Shown in pieces: positions 421 through 55,000 of a stretch of 64,000 nucleotides of DNA. The stretch is from Octopus sinensis (Eukaryota). The stretch covers positions 183,768,001 through 183,832,000 of the forward strand of contig NC_042998.1 of the NCBI RefSeq assembly GCF_006345805.1, in the 5' to 3' direction. A program made the position numbers and the translations under genes. Positions within the stretch are counted from its first letter, which is position 1. Each line of letters begins with the position of its first letter. The notes under the pieces are model-generated. The model was not told the DNA's origin. It worked only from the letters and a program-made list of their open reading frames with translations, and did not search any database.

Positions 421-460
<40 letters not shown>
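421..460. repeat. (TATC)n microsatellite, left flank of a short Tx1-type insertion
   Basis: Perfect TCTA repeats; the same repeat resumes at 698. Confidence 0.95.
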
Positions 461-463
<3 letters not shown>

Positions 464-697
464 TTTTTTTTTTTTTTTTTTTTTCCTCTCCCCCCCTTTT
501 TTTTTTTTTTTCCTCTCCCCCCCTTTTTTTTTTTAACCCCCCTTATTTTTGTCCTCTTTCTCTCCTTTTACGATCCCTTTTGATCGAACCTCCCCCTTCC
601 TTTTTTTTTTTTTTTTTTTTTAATACCTTCAAAAGAAAAGCTCTACCTTGTAATTTGTTCTATCTGTGTGCAGCCCTGTGTGGCTAATAAAGAAACA
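461..697 (+). mobile_element. 5'-truncated Tx1/L1-type LINE (3' UTR only) inside (TATC)n
   Basis: Near-identical to 19670-19857 (cgatcccttttgatcgaa...ctctaccttgtaatttgttctatctgtgtgcagccctgtgtggctaataaagaaaca); TATC repeats on both sides. Confidence 0.85.
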
Positions 698-741
<44 letters not shown>

Positions 742-1849: not shown

Positions 1850-2115
1850 TGTCTGTGAATATACTCGAACTTCGCAAGTATTCAGCCACCAGAAATAATG
1901 TGGTCAGTTGACTCACTGGTACTTGATACAGCTGAGCACTGGGTGTTATCTATTTCCTCACACTTCAAAATTGCTGGCCTTGAGCCAAAACACGAAAGGG
2001 TTAGTGATAAATTAAGTACCAGTTACGCACTGGGGTCGGTGTAATCGACTTAATACCTATGTCTGTCCTTGTTTGTCCCCTCTGTGTTTAGCCCCTTGTG
2101 GGTAATAAAGAAATA
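1850..2115 (+). mobile_element. Old tRNA-derived SINE remnant followed by a 5'-truncated Tx1-tailed SINE (about 2020-2115)
   Basis: gataaattaagtaccagttacgcactggggtc...tgtcccctctgtgtttagccccttgtgggtaataaagaaata matches the family at 8195-8826 in reverse complement. Confidence 0.8.
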
Positions 2116-2735
2116 GGTATTAAAGAGGGCGACGAATCAAGCCTACTATTCAAGAAAAGGAACAGTCACTCCGACAAGCTTCCATTTAATAAATTTCAGT
2201 CATAAAGCCTTCTAAGATGCTAGGAAGGGAATTTGGTTGCAATTTCTTGCAGTCGCTTGTCCACATGTACATGTGTGTGTGTGCCTGTGTTCCTTTGCGC
2301 ATTGTTCTTCTGTTTCTTTTGACCATCCAGGATTACAATACATTTTTCCCTATCAACTGAGTGTGTATTTTCCTTTTTAACTTTGTGCAAAATAAACATG
2401 AGAAATCGAATACTCCTCCCACCATTTTTTAAATATTTTCAATTCTTTAATTAAGATTAAAACCAGTGGCGAGGTACGGGATATATATACCGCAATAGAA
2501 CGGGTACTTTATATATGTACGCTTGGTATATTCAACTATGTTGGGACAGCGGTCCACATGGCATTGATTAACACATCACTTTAAATCTGTTACTTCGCAA
2601 TTTGGGTGCAAGTTAGTGTGGATATGTTTAATGCAGTTAGTGGTGTAACATGGGCAGGTCCACCGGAACAGTTGACCAAGACGCAAAATTGTTAGGGAAA
2701 CAAAATTTCAAAAGAAAATTATAAAGAGTTAAGAA

Positions 2736-6958: not shown

Positions 6959-7994
6959 TTGTAGAAATTCACATCAAACTAAACTTTATCCTCTTTGAAT
7001 ACGAAAATATAGGAGGGCCTGATAAAGCTCGTGCAACCGTTCTTTCTTCTCTTCCTCTACTTATTTAAAACGTAGTAGTAGCAGTAATAACAGCAGCAGC
7101 AGTAGCAGTATTAGTAGTAATAGTAGTTTTTGTTGTTGTGTAACATAATCACCTGTTCTTTCCTCTCTCCGCGAAATTTCAGGGTCTTTACCAATAAAAA
7201 AAAGCCGTTATTATTTATTTATTATTCGGCAACATTAGTCCCGACTTCAAAGAACTGTTTGAATAAACGCCACTAAACGCAGTTTTATGATGCTTTGTTA
7301 GTTCACGATCATTTGTTTATTTTCCCTAAGATTAAACATCTTCTCGCGCAGAAATATTTGAACTTAAAGTTCCAGTTGAACAGACAAAAACGTAGGCTCA
7401 GTAATTGGAGGTTTTACTAAAGCTCCTTGATCCGCCTTGTTTTGGAATAAAAAACGCGAGCTTGTCAATAAAACCTCGACAAAACATTGTTGATCAATGT
7501 CAGAATAGACTTGATTTAAATATAATTCTTTAGGGTGTTAATACTTAAACGAAAGTGCATAATACTTCACCAATACCAATAAAAATGTAAATCACAATCA
7601 TATTTTAATTTTAATTTTTAACCCTAAAAAAGAAATGTTGCAAGGCTCAACTAGTAATATTTTCTACCGTAGGCAGAAGGCCTGAAAATCTGAGAAAATC
7701 GATAACATCAATTTCAGTGGTCAACTTATTTTATCAATCCTGAAATGATGAAAGGCAAAGTCGACCTCGGTAGAATTTGAACTCAGAGTAAAAAGACGGA
7801 TGAACTGTCGTTAAAATTTTCGGCCAGCATGCTAACGATTCAGCCAGCTCGAAACTTAAAGTTCAACCAATAACTTAACGATCCTAAGAGATGAATAAAT
7901 AAAATCAACTCTGGCTGGACTTGAACTCAGTTGGGCGTAATTAATTAGTTAATATGTTTAGTCTCATATTCTAACGTTTCTGTCATGTCACTAC

Positions 7995-9017
7995 CGTATG
8001 ATTTCAACTCCGCATGAAGATCGATAAGGACATGATCAATAAGGACATGTTGAACTTTGCAAACTACGACTCAGACTTCATGAAGACCAACATCAGCGGT
8101 GATGAGACATGGGTTTATGGTCTCTGCTCAATGTGTTCGTTCGGTCATCCTGCGTGGAAACGAAATCCGACGAGCGCGCACTACACGTCTATACATATTT
8201 CTTTACTACCCAGAAGGGGCTAAACACAGAGAGGACAAACAGGGACAGACAAACGGATTAAGTCGATTATATCGACCACATTGCGTAACTGGTACTTATT
8301 TAATCGACCCCGAAAGGATGAAAGGCAAAGTCAACCTCGGCGGAATTTGAACTCAGAACGTAACGGCAGACGAAATACCTATTTCTTTATTACCCACAAG
8401 GGGCTAACATAGAGGGGACAAACATGGACAGACATAGGTATTAAGTCGATTACATCGACCCCAGTGCGTAATTGGTACTTAATTTATCGACCCCGAAAGG
8501 ATGAAAGGCAAAGTCAACCTCGGCGGAATTTGAACTCAGAACGTAACGGCAGACGAAATACCGCTAAGCATTTTGCCCGGCGTGCTAACGTTTCTTATTT
8601 CTTTATTGCCCACAAGGGGCTAAACATAGAGGGGACAAACAAGGACAGACAAAGGCGTTAAGTCGATTACATCGACCCCAGTGCGTAATTGGTACTTAAT
8701 TTATCGACCCCGAAAGGATGAAAGGCAAAGTCGACCTCGGCGGAATTTGAACTCAGAACGTAAAGGCAGACGAAATACCGCTAAGCATTTCGCCCGGCGT
8801 GCTAACGTTTCTGCCAGCTCGCCGCCTTAGACTACACGCCTATACCGTAGGCGTAACAGCTGGGAACTAACGCGGCCTACCTGCACGAAAGCTTTCGTTG
8901 CATGCGCAGGAAAGATGACGTTGCTTCTCAACCTAAAGGGTTTTTCTCGCACGGCAAAAAACTTTATATTTGGCGGGAAAAAAAATAAAGTCAGACACTT
9001 TTTGGACGTAACTCATA
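7995..9017. mobile_element. Decayed mariner-type element interrupted by a SINE trimer
   Basis: DSDFMKTNISGDETWVYG resembles the mariner 'I.TGDETW' first-Asp motif; TIR-like tcagacactttttggacgtaactcata at about 8991-9017. Confidence 0.55.
8195..8826 (-). mobile_element. Head-to-tail trimer of the Tx1-tailed tRNA SINE (family S1)
   Basis: Units 8595-8826 (full head GGCGGCGAGCTGGCAGAAAC), 8380-8594 and 8195-8379; outer TSD ACTACACG(T/C)CTATAC at 8180-8194 and 8831-8845. Confidence 0.93.
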
Positions 9018-9092
9018 TATGTAAACATACACCTGTTCCCGTCAGTTCTTTTTCTATCGTTGCTAGGTTTGTTCAAAGCTCTACATAATATT

Positions 9093-9125
<33 letters not shown>

Positions 9126-18670: not shown

Positions 18671-18760
<90 letters not shown>
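18671..18760. repeat. (TATC)n, left flank of the Tx1-type insertion
   Basis: Perfect repeats. Confidence 0.97.
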
Positions 18761-19857
18761 AGGGCGAATAGCACCGCGAGTGTCGCGTTGCTCTCAAGCA
18801 ACTCTGCCGTCCTGGGTCGACCTTAAGTGACTTCAACACAACCAAAGCATTCTATAGGGGTTTAGTGGAGGGGAGGTACGACGACGAGCTCGGGGCTAAC
18901 CTGGACGTCGACGAGGAGTACCTGACCCGCCTGTTCAGGACGACTTTCGGGCCAGGGCCCATGGACAACTTCCAGAGATCCCTGGCCTGGCAGTGCTACC
19001 GAGAAGCGCTACCCGTTCGGGATAAGCTCTACAGACACGGCTCGAGAAACACGGGGCCGACCTGCCCGAGATGCGGTCAGAGCGACGAAACCGTTCTGCA
19101 CGCACTCGTTCAGTGTCCAACAATTTCCGACCTGTGGGCTTATGTCGAACAACTGCTGTCACGTGTGGGACGAGTCGGTTTATCAGCTGAGTCTATCGTC
19201 AATATTGTCACACCTCCTTCCTTCAAACGGGAAGGAAGAGCTATTTTCATCATCCTTGTGGCTATGGCGAAAGAATGTATCTGGTGGACGCGTCTGAAAG
19301 GATTGGAGACAAACACTTTCCTCTCTGGTCAATCTCTCATCAACTTCTTCAAGTACCACTTGAAAAGGAAAGTGAGAGTAGAGAGGCAAGTTTTGTCTAG
19401 CGAATGTTTTAAAAAAAGATGGGTGAATGTAGCAAGAATGGCACGTATGAATGACGAAGCCACCTTGAGCATAGTCCTATGAACCCAGAAATCGAAAACA
19501 GAGAGTTGCTTATTTGCAAAAAAAAAAAAAAAAAAAGAAATAAAATGTGACTTCATTGACCGAGGTTACCGTGGTCTTTTCCGTAGGCTTTTCTTTCCAC
19601 GGGTAAACCTCACCTGTCCTCCCCTTTACACTTCATATTGACATTTCTGTGATAACGATCCCTATTGATCAATTTTTTTTTTTTTCCCTCTCCCCCTTTT
19701 TTTTTAACCCCCTTTTTTTGTCCTCTTTCTCTCCTTTTACGATCCCTTTTGATCGAAACTCCCCTTCCTTTTTTTTTTTTTTTAACCTTCAAAAGAAAAG
19801 CTCTACCTTGTAATTTGTTCTATCTGTGTGCAGCCCTGTGTGGCTAATAAAGAAACA
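18761..19857 (+). mobile_element. 5'-truncated Tx1/L1-clade LINE (ORF2 C-terminus with zf-RVT-type Cys/His motif plus 3' UTR)
   Basis: ORF 18865-19482: WQCYREALPVRDKLYRHG...CPRCGQSDETVLHALVQCP; T-rich 3' UTR ending AATAAAGAAACA; (TATC)n on both sides. Confidence 0.88.
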
Positions 19858-19869
19858 TATCTATCTATC

Positions 19870-19973
<104 letters not shown>

Positions 19974-25864: not shown

Positions 25865-26099
25865 TTATGATGGCGGAAGCTCACCAGAGTTCGCTACAGG
25901 AATATTAAGATACGGTTAAAACTAATTTAACCGCAAGATTATTTCAAGAGAGAGATTGATTCTCATTCATACAACTAGCACTATCAATCTCTGTTAAAAT
26001 ATACCACTCACCTACAATATCAACCCTTCTTTCCCTTTTCCACTGTAAATGGATACCAAAAAATATTCCATAGCTATTCTGTTAGGTAACATTGTCTCT

Positions 26100-26410
<311 letters not shown>

Positions 26411-29507: not shown

Positions 29508-30159
29508 AGGTAATGTCTATTTGTGTCAAAAAGAGAAGGCGAAAATAAACGGTAAACTTAAACTTTATAGCATTTGTCGTATTTCCGGCCCCATTTTCTA
29601 CCCGAATCTTACTGTGATCAATCGTCGAAGGAATAGTACACTTTCACCCCTATTAAACAGTTGTTCTCTTAAGTACAGAGAAGCAGCATGATAAATAATA
29701 CAGCGGAAACTCTGCTAATTTCGTTTGTGACACCTTTCTCTTTCCGTATCATTTATAACTGCCTAGCAACATTAATAATGATACTTCTGTCCCGGCCCTC
29801 ATGGCATTCAGTTTCGCTGCCGCCGCCGCCGCCGCCGCCGCCTCACAGCAGCAGCAGCAACAACAACAATTTTTTTTTCCAGTTCTTAAGATTCATGACT
29901 TATAGGTTCCAGATTTGAAGTAGCATTGTTAAGATATGGAGAAGAAAAGAGCTGAGGACTGAAACTGACTGCAGGATGAAATACATAATACGAAAGAGTG
30001 ACAAAAAAAAAAGGGGGGAATGAAAGACGGAGAGAGGAAGGAACGGAGGGAGAGCGAGAGGAGAGAGAGAGAGTGAGTGAGAGAGAGAGAGAGAGAGAGA
30101 GAAAGTGTGTGTGTATGTGTGTGTGTATGTGTGCGTGTGTGAGAGCGTGCGTGAGATAT

Positions 30160-30352
30160 TTATTTCTTTATTGCCCACAGGGGGCTAAACATAGAGGGGA
30201 CAAACAAGGACAGACAAACGGATTAAGTCGATTACATCACCCCAGTGCGTAACTGGTACTTAATTTATCGACCCCGAAAGGATGAAAGGCAAAGTCGACC
30301 GGCGGAATTTGAACTTCCGAGGTCGACTTTGCCTTTCATCCTTTCGGGGTCG
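30160..30352 (-). mobile_element. 5'-truncated S1 SINE with a fold-back inverted duplication
   Basis: Tail at about 30160; about 30268-30300 is mirrored at about 30318-30352. Confidence 0.8.
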
Positions 30353-30758
30353 TGAGATATTGTGTTCGTATAGCCCCAAGTCAGGTCTGATTGAGCAGAC
30401 AATGTACGCAGAGATGGGCGTATAAGACTTGGTCAGAGCGGGACAGTTACTGTCTCCTGTGTTACCCATCACAGTGCTTAAGGTTAATAATGAGACTCTT
30501 GAGGTTTCAGCTATTTGTGAGTGTATGTGTGTGTTTTTTTTTTTAAATATATTTGTCTATACTGAGTAAGAGAAAGAGATAGGTGTTTTAGTAATTTCAT
30601 TATAATAGTGTTCGTGGTGTTACATATACATAACAGAAAGTTTTCAGGTTAACCTGAATGGCACGTAGGAGGTAATCAATAGTTGCATGTATTATAACAT
30701 GATGTTGTAAGATTGATTATATTGAACTAAGACGAAACAGTTGAACTTGTAACAGATA

Positions 30759-32005: not shown

Positions 32006-32187
32006 GTATGTATATAGTATGTTCGTATTTTTGTATGCAGTGTAAATTAACGAAATATAAACAAATGAACGAAATAGCACATGTATGGAACTGCTAATTT
32101 AACGGTAAATTATTACTGAGAGACAAAAAAATTTTATATTTTACCTTGCAACTGCTGCGATAATTATTTATTTCTTTACTAAATACC

Positions 32188-32418
32188 TATTTCTTTATTA
32201 CCCACAAGGGGCTATACCGAGAGGGGACAAAGAAGGACAGACAAACGGATTAAGTCGATTACATCGACCCCCAGTGCGTAACTGGTACTTAATTTATCGA
32301 CCCCAAAAGGATGAAAGGCAAAGTCGACCTCGGCGGAATTTGAACTCAAAACGCAAAGACAGACGAAATACCGCTAGGCATTTCGCCCGGCGTGCTAACG
32401 TTTCTGCCAGCTCGCCGC
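32188..32418 (-). mobile_element. Full-length Tx1-tailed SINE (S1)
   Basis: Complete head to tail; the tail is followed by GGTATTT on the minus strand. Confidence 0.92.
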
Positions 32419-40320: not shown

Positions 40321-40401
40321 ACATTTTAAATACTATTAAATTTCATTCAATTTTAAAAAAGGTAAAATCGGACAGAATTTATGGGATGACTTTATATATG
40401 T

Positions 40402-40560
40402 ACGATGGGGTTCTTTCAGTTTCCGTCTACCAAATCCACTCACATGGATTTGGTCGGTCCGAGGCTATAGTAGAAGACATTTTCCCAAAGTGCCACGCAG
40501 TTGGACTGAACCCGGCACCATGTGGTTGGGAAGCAAGCTTCATACTACACACCCACGCCT
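40402..40560 (-). mobile_element. CORE-type SINE 5' half
   Basis: acgatggggttctttcagtttccgtctaccaaatccactcac...gaacccggcaccatgtggttgggaagc. Confidence 0.7.
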
Positions 40561-40808
40561 GCACCTAATTTGTTTCCTTTTTGGACATTTACCGCATTCA
40601 CTCAACTATAGATTCGATGGCGATAAATTTCCAACAAGCCTATTATAGGATTATGACATTTTGACTGTATCAAGGGAGTGCGTGTGACTTGTTGCAGAAC
40701 ACATATTCCAAGTCACTTCGTTCACAAAACATTGCTTGTTCGATTCGCTCCTAGGTGTTTACTTCCTTCGCTTTATACATAAGTGAAAGTTCACACACAC
40801 ACGCACGC

Positions 40809-40874
<66 letters not shown>

Positions 40875-40877
<3 letters not shown>

Positions 40878-41029
40878 AACGTGTAAATATTGGGCTTTAA
40901 AAAAACCCCTTGGACAGGTCTTTTTAAGCCAATATTTACACGGTCCATCTACTTCGTATTCCACCTTTAAAAACGATATATTTCACGTCTCGAAGTTTCT
41001 AAATTCTTATCATTCACACACACACACAC

Positions 41030-41071
<42 letters not shown>

Positions 41072-41220
41072 AACGTGTAAATATTGGGCTTTAAAAAAAC
41101 CCCTTGGACAGGTCTTTTTAAGCCAATATTTACACGGTCCATCTACTTCGTATTCCACCTTTAAAAACGATATATTTCACGTCTCGAAGTTTCTAATTCT
41201 TATCATTCACACACACACAC
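40875..41220. repeat. Tandem duplication, period 194 bp, bounded by (CA)n
   Basis: Unique segments starting at 40875 and 41069 are identical except for a 1-bp indel. Confidence 0.95.
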
Positions 41221-41501
41221 ACAAACACATCGTTTATAACGAACAAGATAAAAAGTATGCATGGTGTAGAGTATAATCATATTTATTCGGCTAATGCTGT
41301 TTGTCGTTACACGAAGTTTCACGATAATTTGATCAATCAAATGGTTGTTTGTCTGTAATGAAGACAGTTTTTTTTTCATTGCAGACCAAAACACATACAC
41401 ACTCATTTATGTATACAAATGCACACAATACACAGCACCCACACACATTCACACGGACATACACACACACTCACTCACTCACTCACTCACTCACTCACTC
41501 A

Positions 41502-46960: not shown

Positions 46961-48470
46961 ATACATGCATTCTTGCCATAAAATAGCTGTGAAGATATAA
47001 TTAATCATGAGAAGGTTTGAAAATCCAGGAATCGAAATATCACACTTACATTTTCTGTGTTTCTATTGACTTCGATACAGTCAGTGTTGTATGATGCATA
47101 GTTAGTTTCAAGTCTATATATATAAGAGGTTTTCTAGGCGTCTTTCTTTTGAGCTTTTCTTTTCCAGTTAAGTCCAGGTGTAGGAAATTTTAAGAATGTC
47201 CGTTGGGATAACAGCAAGAGATTATTTGTCTTTTTTTATTTCCTACATACCAGCAAGGATAGATTTCTTCCGACCTTATTCGCAGAATGATGCCACAAAC
47301 ATTTCCGCTTTAGACACAAGGCGACTAATATTAGAGGAAGGAAGTTGGTTAATCGATACTATCGATTACAGTACTTGATTAGTATTATATTTTATCGACC
47401 CTGAAAGAATGAAAGGTAAATATAAATCATTTTTTTCGATGCTCTAACGACTCCGCCTCTAACGATTCCGCTAAATCAGTGTGATGCAATAACCAGTACG
47501 TGGCTTGCATAGATTTTCTGATTCAGGCACACGATCAGCAACCCTAGAGGAGGGATGTAAGTTGATAGTAGGGTGGAGGGCACGATGCATTTCGGGGTAG
47601 TGCGATCGAGTTGGTTAATCTCCGCTCGCGTCCATTTCAGGATGAATTCACTCTAGCGGACTACAGCAACAGCCCATATGTTGATGGCAGTCACAAGGTT
47701 CCTTGAGTCAACTTCTTCTTGAAGTCAGAACTCAACAGGAGAGGAGATTGACCAACTCGTTCGCACTACCCAACTAACAATGATATTGTATGGTGTCCTC
47801 CACCCTAAGGCGAACGTACACAGGCTCTACATGAAAAGGTGTAAAGGTGGACGTGGGCTGGTTAGTGGAGTGCATCAGCAGTGAAAGAAGAAACATGGCA
47901 GAATATTTGGTAAATGGCAAACGAGACCTGCTACAGTATGCTGCTAATGCGGAAGGATTTATCAAATATGGACTTGAGAATGCTAATGAATTCCGATCAC
48001 GAATAACCAACGAGAGAGAAGAAACTCTACTCCGCATAGAATTACATGGTCAGTTCCACCGTGAAACTAACCAGGTAGCAACATGGAGGTAGCTCAGCAA
48101 GGGTGACGCTAAAAAAAGATTGAAAGCCTTACCATCGCTGCCCAGGATCAGGCAGTGAACACCGAGTGAAAAGGGACATATACCACACAAATGCAACGAA
48201 CCTCCGCATAATGTGTGGGAAGAGGGTCGAAAGCGTGACTTACATTGTTAGTGCTTGTGAAAGTCTTGTGCTGAAAGAGTACAAGCGCAGACACGACAAG
48301 GTGGCACAGAACCTTCATTGGCTACTATGCCGGAAGTATAGATGCGAGGTAACGGGTGCTTGATACCAACATACACCAGAAAAGGTAGTGGGCGAAAAGG
48401 GGAAGGCAAAATCGTCTGGGACTTTGACTTCCAGACAGACAAGGTGTTAGGATACCGAAGGCCGGATATT

Positions 48471-48682
48471 CTTTTCTACTCTAGGCACAAAGCCCGAAAT
48501 TTTGGAGGACAGGGGCCAGTCGATTAGATTAACACCAGTACGCAACTGGTACTTAATTTATCGACCCTGAAAGGATGAAAGGCAAGTCGACCTCGGCGGA
48601 ATTTGTACTCAGAACGTAAAGACAGACGAAATACTGCTAAGCATTTCGCCCGGCGTGCTAACGATTCTGCCAGCTCGCCGCC
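48471..48682 (-). mobile_element. Full-length tRNA SINE (S1 head, alternative tail), 3' half of the U6-SINE chimera
   Basis: Head GGCGGCGAGCTGGCAGAATCG at 48682; tail ...aaaatttcgggctttgtgcctagagtagaaaagaata. Confidence 0.93.
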
Positions 48683-48688
48683 ATTTAT

Positions 48689-48727
48689 AAGATATGGAAC
48701 GCTTCACGAATTTGCGTGAGGCCATGT

Positions 48728-48761
<34 letters not shown>

Positions 48762-48780
48762 TTACTGTCGAAGCAAGTAC
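48689..48780 (-). pseudogene. U6: U6 snRNA retrocopy with internal deletion, fused 5' of a SINE
   Basis: Minus strand GTACTTGCTTCGACAGTAAATATACTAAAATTGGAACGATACAGAGAAGATTAACATGGCCTCACGCAAATTCGTGAAGCGTTCCATATCTT matches canonical U6 from nt 1, including the ACAGAGA box; about 14 nt are missing after GGCC. Confidence 0.95.
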
Positions 48781-49196
48781 ACCGAAGGCCGGATATTGTA
48801 AGCTTTAGAGGGGCACATAAGAGTGCCTAATAATCGACGTGACAGGGCCAGGAGATCAACATATTATCACGAAAGAAAGAGAAAAGATTGATAAATATGG
48901 AGACCCGAGAATTGGGATCGCCAAGGTGTGGCTGCTATGAGAGTCAAACATAAAAGTTGTCTCTCTTGTCATCGGAGCATTGGGTTCAATACCACCCAAC
49001 CTGAAGAAACATCTGAAAACTTTAAAAATACCCTACAACCTAGGTGTATTGCAAAAATCGGCATATTGTGTAAAATACTGTTTGTTTGAGGTCCTTGTGA
49101 CTTGACAGTACAAACCCCCGGTTGACATGATATCTTCAGTCAACATCATGATACTGGATACTGTGCGACGTCTTAAATAATAATAATATTATTATT

Positions 49197-54380: not shown

Positions 54381-55000
54381 TATTCTTTTCTATTCTAGGC
54401 ACAAGGCACGAAATTTTTGAGGAGAGAAGGCCAGTCGATTAGATAAACCCAGTACGCAACTGGTACTTAATTTATCGACCCCGAAAGGATGAAAGGCAAA
54501 ATCGACCTCAGTGGAATTTGAACTCAGAACGTAAAGACGGATGAAATAACTCTAAGCATTTCGCCCGGCGTGCTAACGTTTCTTATTTATTTATTGCCCA
54601 CAAGGGGCTAAACATAGAGGGGACAAAGAAGGACAGACAAAGGGGTTAAATTGATTACATCGACCCCAGTGCGTAACTAGTACTTAATTTATCGACCCCG
54701 AAAGAATGCAAGGCAAAGTCGACCTCGGCGGAATTTGAACTCAGAACGTAGCGGCAGACGAAATACCTATTTCTATTTCTTTACTACCCACAAGGGGCTA
54801 AACACAGAAGGGACAAACAAGGGCAGACAAACGGATTAAGTCGATTATATCTACCCCAGTGCGTGACTGGTACTTATTTAATCAACCCCGAAAGGATGAA
54901 AGGCAAAGTCGACCTCGGCGGAATTTGAACTCAGAACGTAACGGCAGACGAAATACTGCTAAGCATTTCGCCCGGCGTGCTAACGTTTCTGCCAGCTCGC
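54381..55000 (-). mobile_element. Second SINE trimer (two Tx1-tailed units plus one alternative-tail unit)
   Basis: Junctions GTTTC|TTATT at 54582/54583 and AAATACC|TATTTC at 54767/54768. Confidence 0.93.

What the first reader, a model, noticed from the sequence alone, without database searches (positions are those of the whole stretch)
8180..8845. Self-targeting SINE: trimer nested at two fixed sites of its own tRNA head
Seen: three head-to-tail units under one 15-bp TSD. The internal junctions join the tail to head positions GAAACGTTAGC (8594/8595) and GGTATTTCG (8379/8380). The same two breakpoints recur at 54582/54583 and 54767/54768 in the opposite order and with a different innermost SINE subfamily, which argues against simple tandem duplication. 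Established: many Tx1-clade elements are sequence-specific (tRNA, snRNA, microsatellite or transposon targets). Inference: a SINE with a borrowed Tx1 tail is mobilised by a Tx1 endonuclease that targets the tRNA-like SINE head, so arrays grow by recursive insertion. I am not aware of this being described for these SINEs but cannot search the literature.
Basis: partly seen in the sequence, partly recalled or inferred. Interest (0 to 1): 0.8.

Follow-up and report, generated by a model that had tools for sequence, protein, structure and literature searches.

The report
Octopus SINE trimers with fixed joints
Two head-to-tail triplets of an octopus short retrotransposon really are joined at the same two internal positions, but the joints travel with particular SINE lineages, so they look more like several SINE RNAs (or one read-through RNA) copied in one insertion than like an enzyme cutting the SINE's own head.

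Summary
Window 8180-8845 (minus strand) holds three SINE units under one 15-bp target-site duplication (14/15). The internal units start at head nt 18 (GAAACGTTAGC) and nt 50 (GGTATTTCG). The same two joints recur at 54582/54583 and 54767/54768, in the other order and next to a different SINE family. The organism is an Octopus. The SINE tail matches the 3' end of an L1/Tx1-type LINE (APE endonuclease, RT, zf-RVT), and relatives of that LINE in the window sit inside (TCTA)n microsatellites. Joint type follows the lineage of the upstream unit. GGTATT also follows that lineage's tail where no head follows. Solo copies have unrelated target sites and never start at nt 18 or 50. A U6-SINE chimera under one 14-bp duplication shows that this machinery switches templates. 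Best reading (about 0.45): the joints are carried in read-through or multimeric SINE RNAs and re-assorted by template switching during a single insertion. Stepwise homing into resident heads (about 0.25 to 0.35) cannot be excluded with about 17 units. This is a new variant of known processes, of moderate interest.

The parts
8831..8845 (-). 5' copy of the target-site duplication of array 1 (GTATAGGCGTGTAGT)
   Evidence: It matches 8180-8194 at 14/15 positions.
8596..8828 (-). Unit A (A1): full-length SINE, nt 1-233, tail variant GGGCAAT ('C-type', TTAACGCC lineage)
8594..8595 (-). Joint J1: complete tail ...AAAGAAATA(A) joined to head nt 18, GAAACGTTAGC. The A at 8595 is ambiguous.
8380..8594 (-). 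Unit B (B1): nt 18-233, tail variant GGGTAAT ('T-type', TAATACCTATG lineage)
8379..8380 (-). Joint J2: complete tail ...AAAGAAATA joined to head nt 50, GGTATTTCG
8196..8379 (-). Unit C (C1): nt 50-233, tail variant GGGTAGT (sub-lineage shared with unit A2 of array 2)
8180..8194 (-). 3' copy of the target-site duplication of array 1 (GTATAGACGTGTAGT). It begins with GTAT, like the head site of J2.
54768..55000 (-). Array 2, unit A2: nt 7-233, T-type tail GGGTAGT with GAAATA duplicated, followed by J2 at 54767/54768
54584..54767 (-). Array 2, unit B2: nt 50-233, C-type tail of the same TTAACSCC lineage as unit A, followed by J1 at 54582/54583
54382..54582 (-). Array 2, unit C2: starts at nt 18. 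Its body and tail belong to a second SINE family (T2, ...CCTAGAATAGAAAAGAAT).
48454..48794 (-). U6 snRNA (48780-48688) fused to a full-length T2 SINE (48687-48468) between two perfect 14-bp TSDs, ATCCGGCCTTCGGT (48794-48781 and 48467-48454). This is a template-switch chimera made by the same machinery.
   Evidence: (Rfam U6, 63.7 bits)
32168..32418 (-). Solo full-length T-type SINE (32418-32188) whose tail is followed by GGTATTT (32187-32181) and then only AGTAAAGAAATAA (32180-32168). J2 is present without a head behind it.
2006..2121 (+). T-type SINE fragment, nt 124-233, of the same TAATACCTATG lineage as unit B. It is joined upstream to the tail of another SINE and followed by GGTATT (2116-2121), then non-SINE DNA.
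18761..19857 (+). 5'-truncated LINE (zf-RVT ORF 18772-19479) whose 3' end ...CAGCCCTGTGTGGCTAATAAAGAAACA is homologous to the SINE tail. It is flanked by (TATC)n on both sides (18671-18760 and 19858-19941).

Best explanation
The arrays are compound retrocopies of an Octopus tRNA-type SINE. The SINE has a head with pol III boxes, a widely conserved central domain, and a tail borrowed from an L1/Tx1-type LINE.

I propose that the two joints, tail to nt 18 and tail to nt 50, are not made afresh by a nuclease that recognises the head. They are carried in RNA. The element has no TTTT terminator, so a SINE that already sits in front of a partial head is transcribed through the joint. Particular SINE lineages therefore own a head-derived 3' extension or a whole second unit. 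During one target-primed reverse transcription, the LINE reverse transcriptase copies such RNAs and switches between homologous SINE RNAs within the shared head. That swaps the unit behind a joint but leaves the joint itself unchanged. The product is a head-to-tail multimer under a single target-site duplication.

Shown: the anatomy, the single TSD of array 1, the LINE-tail homology, the link between lineage and joint, the absence of a terminator, and the U6 chimera.

Inferred: that each array is one event, that read-through RNAs exist, and that the switches happen at the RNA/cDNA stage.
For: 1. One 15-bp TSD encloses all three units of array 1.
2. The same machinery made a U6-SINE chimera between perfect 14-bp TSDs, the classical signature of LINE RT template switching. 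A 5'-inverted copy with an 11-bp TSD (30150-30361) shows L1-like twin priming.
3. Joint type follows the upstream unit.
   - All four tails in front of a GGTATT joint are the GGGTA variant. That variant is 5 of 11 units, so the chance probability is 0.015.
   - Both tails in front of the GAAACG joint belong to the TTAACSCC/GGGCAAT lineage. That lineage is 2 of 11 units, so the chance probability is 0.018.
4. The fifth GGGTA tail, unit C at the array end, is followed by TGTATAG. The genomic TSD there starts with GTAT, which is microhomology to the GGTAT extension.
5. GGTATT(T) follows that tail twice with no head behind it, at 32181-32187 and 2116-2121.
6. No unit that starts at nt 18 or 50 stands alone. 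About 11 solo or first copies start at nt 1-8 and are not preceded by a SINE tail. All 4 truncated units are preceded by one (Fisher p = 7e-4).
7. There is no TTTT anywhere on the SINE strand of the 633-nt array 1, so pol III could read through it.
8. The middle unit B shares private variants with both neighbours (nt 140 A with unit A, nt 96 T with unit C) and is 74/74 identical to unit C over nt 50-123 but only 95/110 over nt 124-233. This fits the same RNAs being re-used within one event.
9. Precedent exists: tripartite chimeras from double template jumps (PMC2104539), and template switching as the accepted source of SINE module exchange (PMC4758252 and PMC4824008).
Against: - The sample is tiny: about 17 units, in a window that was chosen because it holds the arrays.
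- The lineage associations were noticed after the fact.
- Every structural feature (single TSD, in-register joints, full-length first unit) is also produced by stepwise insertion into a resident head with homology-assisted 5' joining.
- The variants shared between neighbouring units could instead come from later gene conversion. One of them is a CpG transition, and identity over nt 50-123 is only mildly unusual (p about 0.08).
- The origin of the first tail-to-18 and tail-to-50 joints is not explained.
- Evidence for a 3' extension is good for the GGTATT joint but weak for the GAAACG joint. Only 1 of 4 solo C-type tails is followed by AGAA.
- Relatives of the partner LINE are clearly target-specific, which keeps a targeting model plausible.
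- No TSD was found for array 2.
Confidence: 0.45

Rival explanations
1. Stepwise homing guided by RNA. SINE lineages whose source copies sit inside another SINE's head make read-through RNAs with a head-derived 3' end (GGUAUUU..., AGAAACG...). That end anneals to nicked resident heads, as co-transcribed target sequence does for target-specific LINEs. New copies therefore land at the same head position, the 5' end is joined in register by homology, and arrays grow one insertion at a time.
For: - It explains the lineage-joint association, the GGTATT remnants, the GTAT start of the array-1 TSD, and the absence of solo units starting at nt 18 or 50.
- The partner LINE's relatives are flanked on both sides by (TCTA)n, or followed by (ATT)n. 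So the sequence after ...AAAGAAA(C)ATA is a lineage-specific target in this group.
- Tandem SINEU-3 arrays made by sequential insertion with Tx1-Mar are a precedent (PMC4494074).
- SINE heads would make up a large share of all GGTATTT sites in a genome that is 11.6% SINE (plus my own estimate).
Against: - No intermediate alleles were seen, though none could be looked for.
- The variants that unit B shares with both neighbours lie beyond a normal 7-15 bp TSD and are not predicted.
- Two trimers in 64 kb need two hits each at the same locus.
- CpG decay shows no age gradient between units. Power is low, with 11-18 sites per unit.
Confidence: 0.25
2. A Tx1 endonuclease recognises two sequences in the tRNA-like head and nicks there, so any SINE RNA with the Tx1 tail is inserted at those sites recursively.
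For: - Two exact, recurrent breakpoints.
- Both are preceded by TRGC (TGGC|AG and TAGC|GG), seen directly in the sequence.
- Target-specific relatives of the LINE exist.
- Many Tx1-clade elements are sequence-specific (PMC4494074).
Against: - Verified TSDs of other copies are unrelated to either site.
- Joint type depends on the lineage of the inserted unit, although the tails differ by a single base 12 nt from the end.
- GGTATT follows the tail without a head twice.
- The three partner-type LINE 3' ends available are followed by (TCTA)n, not by SINE heads.
Confidence: 0.12
3. RNA processing. The SINE RNA is cut in two exposed loops of its tRNA-like head. The 3' fragments keep the LINE-recognised tail. 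The RT runs off their new 5' ends and jumps to the 3' end of another SINE RNA, or a tRNA ligase joins the fragments before copying.
For: - In the predicted fold, nt 17|18 is the 5' edge of the loop of hairpin 11-16/23-28, and nt 49|50 is the 3' edge of the loop of hairpin 34-45/50-61.
- 87.5% of these pairs are kept in 11 heads, against 30-57% when the partners are slid, with two compensatory pairs.
- Both cuts would follow a C.
Against: - Cut fragments should also give solo copies that start at nt 18 or 50. None is seen among about 11.
- The one clear end-jump (U6) is from the full-length 5' end.
- RNAalifold does not recover these hairpins as the consensus, and the structure I tested was derived from one of the sequences.
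- The chance that both joints fall in loops is only about 0.03-0.07.
- It does not explain the lineage association.
Confidence: 0.08
4. DNA-level tandem duplication or unequal exchange within a single SINE, followed by divergence and gene conversion.
For: The repeats are tandem and in register. Neighbouring units share private variants.
Against: - Units differ at subfamily-diagnostic positions (86-96% identity).
- One unit belongs to another SINE family.
- The same joints occur in a second array with different partners.
- CpGs are almost all intact, so there has been little time for divergence.
Confidence: 0.05

Closest known systems
Chimeric retrocopies made by LINE RT template switching (U6-L1 type chimeras; the tripartite chimera of Magnaporthe, PMC2104539)
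   Same: Several RNAs are copied in succession. The acceptor is joined at its 3' end. One TSD surrounds the whole product. Three-part products are documented. A U6-SINE example lies in this same window (48454-48794).
   Different: In the known chimeras the donor is left at its 5' end or at scattered positions, and the partners are unrelated RNAs. Here the partners are homologous SINEs, and the joints fall at two fixed nucleotides that follow the upstream lineage.
Tandem SINEU-3 arrays and Tx1-Mar in crocodilians (Kojima 2015, PMC4494074)
   Same: A SINE moved by a target-preferring Tx1-type LINE forms tandem copies. Its tail is shared with the LINE.
   Different: There the target is a Mariner transposon, the tandem copies sandwich a TSD, and they arise by sequential insertion. 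Here the apparent target would be the SINE's own head, no TSD is visible at the internal joints, and sequential insertion is not shown.
Inherited multimeric SINE families (Alu dimer; the dimeric shrew-mole SINE, PMC13023118 abstract; colugo CYN multimers, from my own knowledge)
   Same: A joint between two SINE-derived monomers becomes a heritable part of an active lineage and is transcribed from the first monomer's promoter.
   Different: Those families have one fixed architecture. Here at least two joints are combined in either order, with partners from different subfamilies and even another family.
Target-specific non-LTR elements that use co-transcribed target sequence (R1/R2; microsatellite-specific Kibi/Koshi of the Tx1 clade, as cited in PMC4494074)
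   Same: The sequence just 3' of the element is a lineage-specific target: (TCTA)n and (ATT)n for the LINE relatives seen here, and GGTATTT for the T-type SINE.
   Different: For the SINE the 'target' is part of the SINE itself. Other copies of the same SINE insert at unrelated sites with 7-15 bp TSDs.

Membership tests
tRNA-derived SINE | Head with pol III A and B boxes / tRNA-like fold | tested here: inconclusive
   A box-B-like GAGTTCAAATTCC and TRGC motifs are visible in the sequence. ARAGORN calls no tRNA in the window and Rfam gives no tRNA hit. The predicted fold has an acceptor-like helix plus two hairpins.
tRNA-derived SINE | 3' tail shared with a partner LINE | tested here: met
   SINE nt 193-234 match the 3' end of the Argonauta APE-RT-zf-RVT LINE at 86% (L011 11150-11192). 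They also resemble the 3' ends of Octopus and other cephalopod relatives.
tRNA-derived SINE | Dispersed copies with target-site duplications | tested here: met
   10 core matches in the window against 0 expected. TSDs of 15, 14 and 11 bp were verified, plus one approximate 7-9 bp match.
Tx1 clade of L1-superfamily LINEs (as partner) | APE endonuclease + RT + C-terminal zinc-binding domain | tested here: met
   Exo_endo_phos, RVT_1 and zf-RVT in L011. RVT_1 and zf-RVT in L003. zf-RVT in window 18772-19479. This architecture defines the L1 superfamily, not Tx1 specifically.
Tx1 clade of L1-superfamily LINEs (as partner) | Placement within Tx1 in an RT phylogeny with reference elements | not testable with these tools
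   No reference Tx1 or L1 sequences were on hand. The only indirect evidence is that L1-Tx1 is the L1-type class listed among recently active O. vulgaris LINEs (PMC13282606).
Target-specific retrotransposon | The same sequence flanks a large share of copies (Kojima's criterion is >20%) | tested here: inconclusive
   LINE relatives: 3 of 3 3' ends are followed by (TCTA)n, and 2 are flanked on both sides. SINE: 4 of about 17 tails are followed by a head and 2 more by GGTATT only. The window was chosen for its arrays, and the other TSDs are unrelated.
Template-switch chimeric retrocopy | One TSD around the whole multi-part copy | tested here: met
   Array 1 has a 14/15 TSD. The U6-SINE chimera has a 14/14 TSD. 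No TSD was found for array 2.
Template-switch chimeric retrocopy | The upstream part ends at the natural 3' end of its RNA | tested here: met
   All four internal joints keep the complete tail ...AAAGAAATA, once with GAAATA repeated. U6 is matched end to end by the Rfam model (positions 1-105 of 105) and runs up to the SINE.
Template-switch chimeric retrocopy | The downstream part is left at its 5' end or at scattered positions | tested here: not met
   The downstream SINE units start at exactly nt 18 or nt 50 in both arrays. This is why I invoke joints carried in RNA plus homologous switching, rather than simple end-jumping.
Simple tandem duplication | Units near-identical and of one origin | tested here: not met
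   Units are 88-96% identical with subfamily-diagnostic differences, and one unit is from another family.

The most novel reading that the evidence does not exclude
A self-homing SINE. Lineages whose source copies sit inside another copy's head make read-through RNAs that end in head sequence. That RNA end guides target-primed reverse transcription to the same nucleotide of other resident heads. Target choice would then be set by the RNA rather than by the endonuclease, and arrays would grow recursively.
Probability: 0.25. Interest if true: 0.7.

Novelty: new variant of a known kind. Interest (0 to 1): 0.45.

Why it matters
SINEs make up about 11.6% of the O. vulgaris genome (PMC13282606). If many copies are compound products with heritable joints, three things follow:
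- Copy counts, subfamily trees and age estimates from standard repeat annotation would be distorted.
- Presence or absence of a 'SINE' at a locus might reflect one event or several.
- Mosaic subfamilies would be explained by copying errors rather than by mutation.

If the homing version is true instead, it would be a natural case in which the RNA 3' end sets target choice for an L1/Tx1-type machinery. That bears on how target-specific LINEs evolve, and on RNA-programmed insertion.

Tried and rejected
**Getting more Octopus DNA**
- Exact scans for the SINE core found nothing in viral contigs or metagenome contigs.
- The scan of prokaryote genomes gave only a chance match inside a bacterial gene.
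- A second metagenome scan with the central-domain pattern returned nine contigs (L012-L020). They share only nt 92-140, so they are other animals' SINEs with the same conserved domain.

**Mining arrays through proteins**
- The SINE's antisense ORF spans the joints, so I searched the protein collection with it. There were no candidates at all.

**Fetching loci through TE proteins**
- This gave three Octopus loci (L001-L003, 61 kb) with only three solo T1 copies. It also gave short LINE contigs and one Argonauta locus.
- None of them is orthologous to the window, so the allele/orthologue test could not be run.
- No paralogous empty site exists for the mariner that hosts array 1.

**Tests that were uninformative or led nowhere**
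- Relative age of units by CpG decay: 0-2 decayed sites per unit, so uninformative.
- A TSD around the composite at 1900-2121: none found.
- RNAalifold on 11 heads gave a weak, different consensus of -5.6 kcal/mol, so the loop mapping rests on the single-sequence fold plus pair counts.
- Microhomology between the canonical tail and GAAACG: rejected, because the joint keeps the full tail.
- A full-text search for the SINE sequence in papers found nothing.

Full report
**What is there**

I read the finding on the minus strand, which is the SINE's sense strand. I number the element from the first A of AAGGCGGCG (window 8828 = nt 1).

Array 1 runs as follows:
- TSD GTATAGGCGTGTAGT (8845-8831), then CT
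- unit A, nt 1-233 (8828-8596)
- one ambiguous A (8595)
- unit B, nt 18-233 (8594-8380)
- unit C, nt 50-233 (8379-8196)
- one T (8195)
- TSD GTATAGACGTGTAGT (8194-8180)

The duplication matches at 14 of 15 bases, about 4e-8 by chance per register.

Array 2 runs as follows:
- unit A2, nt 7-233, with the terminal GAAATA doubled (55000-54768)
- unit B2, nt 50-233 (54767-54584)
- one ambiguous A (54583)
- unit C2, which starts at nt 18 but has the body and tail of a second SINE family, T2 (54582-54382)

TRF calls both arrays independently. The units are 88-96% identical and carry subfamily-diagnostic differences, so these are not fresh duplications. I could not find a TSD for array 2.

**Organism and element**

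TE proteins in the window have their best matches in Octopus sinensis and O. vulgaris. The window holds 10 matches to the SINE core against 0 expected, all on the minus strand.

The SINE has three parts. The head has box-B-like and TRGC motifs, although ARAGORN and Rfam do not call it a tRNA. The central domain (nt 92-140) recurs in unrelated metagenome contigs, so it belongs to the class of widely conserved SINE domains. The tail is LINE-derived.

The tail link is solid. SINE nt 193-234 match the 3' end of an Argonauta LINE at 86%, and that LINE encodes an APE endonuclease, RVT_1 and zf-RVT. Octopus relatives of the LINE end in ...CCCTGTGTGGCTAATAAAGAAACATA. This is the L1-superfamily architecture. 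L1-Tx1 is the L1-type class listed as recently active in O. vulgaris, where SINEs are 11.6% of the genome (PMC13282606). Placement in Tx1 proper was not testable here.

Two copies of the Octopus LINE relative in the window (461-697 and 18761-19857) are flanked on both sides by (TCTA)n, and a third in L003 is followed by it. The Argonauta copy is followed by (ATT)n. So the group includes target-specific members.

**Evidence on the mechanism**

1. *The machinery switches templates.* At 48794-48454 a full U6 snRNA (Rfam, 63.7 bits) is fused to a full-length T2 SINE between two perfect 14-bp duplications. This is the classical chimera made when a LINE RT reaches the end of one RNA and continues on another. 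A 5'-inverted copy with an 11-bp TSD (30150-30361) shows L1-like twin priming.

2. *Solo copies are not aimed at the head.* Verified duplications are GTATAGGCGTGTAGT, ATCCGGCCTTCGGT and AATATCTCACG. A fourth, A(C/G)GTATGTA, matches only approximately.

3. *Joint type follows the upstream unit.*
   - All four tails in front of GGTATT are the GGGTA variant: unit B, unit A2, and the copies at 32188 and 2006.
   - The fifth GGGTA tail, unit C at the end of array 1, is followed by TGTATAG. The genomic duplication there itself begins with GTAT.
   - Both tails in front of GAAACG belong to one sub-lineage (TTAACSCC with GGGCAAT). No other unit in the sample has that combination.
   - With 11 units the chance values are 0.015 and 0.018. 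They are post hoc and the sample is small.

4. *The joint occurs without a head.* GGTATT(T) follows the T-type tail at 32187-32181, where it is followed only by AGTAAAGAAATAA. It also follows the tail at 2116-2121, where non-SINE DNA comes next.

5. *Truncated units never stand alone.* About 11 solo or first copies start at nt 1-8. All four units that start at nt 18 or 50 lie behind another unit's tail (Fisher p = 7e-4).

6. *The array could be transcribed as one RNA.* Array 1 has no TTTT on the SINE strand over 633 nt.

7. *Unit B looks like a mosaic.* It shares a private variant with each neighbour (nt 140 with A, nt 96 with C). It is 74/74 identical to C over nt 50-123 but only 95/110 over nt 124-233.

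**Weighing the models**

Simple end-jumping from cleaved RNAs fits one observation. Both joints map to the edges of predicted hairpin loops: loop 17-22 of hairpin 11-16/23-28, and loop 46-49 of hairpin 34-45/50-61. 87.5% of those pairs are kept in 11 heads. This model is contradicted by point 5 and by the U6 joint being at the full 5' end. The loop coincidence is also only about 0.03-0.07, and RNAalifold does not recover the hairpins.

Points 3, 4 and 6 say that the joints are properties of the upstream lineage's RNA. A SINE that sits in front of a partial head is transcribed through the joint and passes it on. That is the accepted route for SINE module exchange (PMC4758252 and PMC4824008). 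Double jumps that give three-part copies are documented (PMC2104539).

I therefore favour compound copies made in one insertion from such RNAs (0.45).

What I cannot separate from this, with about 17 units and no orthologous loci, is a stepwise version (0.25). In that version the same head-derived RNA end anneals to a nicked resident head and the 5' end joins in register. It would give identical structures, and it is favoured by the target-specific habit of the LINE's relatives. The strict nuclease model gets 0.12, loop cleavage 0.08 and DNA-level duplication 0.05.

**What was not possible**

No Octopus DNA beyond three 20-kb loci could be fetched. None of those loci is orthologous to the window. 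CpG decay gives no age signal.

The decisive tests are:
- a genome-wide table of what follows each tail, split by lineage
- the 5'-end histogram of solo copies
- orthologous or allelic states of these two loci
- RNA evidence for read-through multimers

**Verdict**

The LINE-tail link and the target-specific relatives are confirmed. The proposed head-directed endonuclease is not supported by what the sequences show. Recursive growth remains possible, but only in an RNA-guided form. This is a new variant of known processes (template-switch chimeras, inherited multimeric SINEs, target-specific L1/Tx1 elements) and is of moderate interest.

Noticed in passing
window 48454-48794 (-): A full-length U6 snRNA is fused to a full-length SINE of the T2 family between perfect 14-bp target-site duplications (ATCCGGCCTTCGGT). 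This is a template-switch chimera.
   Followed up: yes
window 422-741 and 18671-19941 (+); L003 3960-5100: LINE fragments (zf-RVT, tail ...AATAAAGAAACATA) lie inside (TCTA)n microsatellites, with the repeat on both sides in the two window copies. This looks like a microsatellite-specific LINE lineage related to the SINE's partner.
   Followed up: partly
window 30150-30361 (-): A SINE copy with its 5' part inverted (nt 91-124 reversed, then nt 76-233 direct) and an 11-bp TSD, AATATCTCACG. This is an L1-like twin-priming structure.
   Followed up: partly
whole window: All 10 SINE core matches, and about 10 of 11 independent insertions of this SINE group, are on the minus strand. This suggests orientation selection inside a transcribed region. 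No host exon was identified.
   Followed up: no
window 1900-2121 (+): The tail of a third, older SINE type (...GAGCCAAAACACGAAAGGGTTAGT) is joined directly to nt 124 of the T1 SINE. This is a tail-to-body joint at a third position. No TSD was found around the composite.
   Followed up: partly
L012-L020 (JGI metagenome contigs): The SINE's central 47 nt (nt 92-140, ...CTTTCGGGGTCGATAAATTAAGTACC) occur at 85-97% identity in contigs that share nothing else with it. The domain is therefore conserved in SINEs of other animals. It was not matched to a named domain family.
   Followed up: no
window 7900-8180 and 8846-9100: Array 1 sits inside a decayed mariner-like transposase remnant (...GDETWVYG). 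Crocodilian Tx1-Mar and SINEU prefer a Mariner target (PMC4494074). With a single case here, this may be coincidence.
   Followed up: no
window 47250-47560 (-): An old T2-like SINE copy has a short internal tandem duplication in its head (GCGGAATCGTTAGAG GCGGAGTCGTTAGAG), next to the position of joint J1.
   Followed up: no
window 40820-41229; 26099-26283 and 40393-40568: A 194-bp tandem repeat (2.1 copies, 98% matches) begins with a (CA)n tract. Separately, an abundant repeat of about 180 bp has 6-7 copies in the 20-kb O. vulgaris locus L001. Neither was identified.
   Followed up: no
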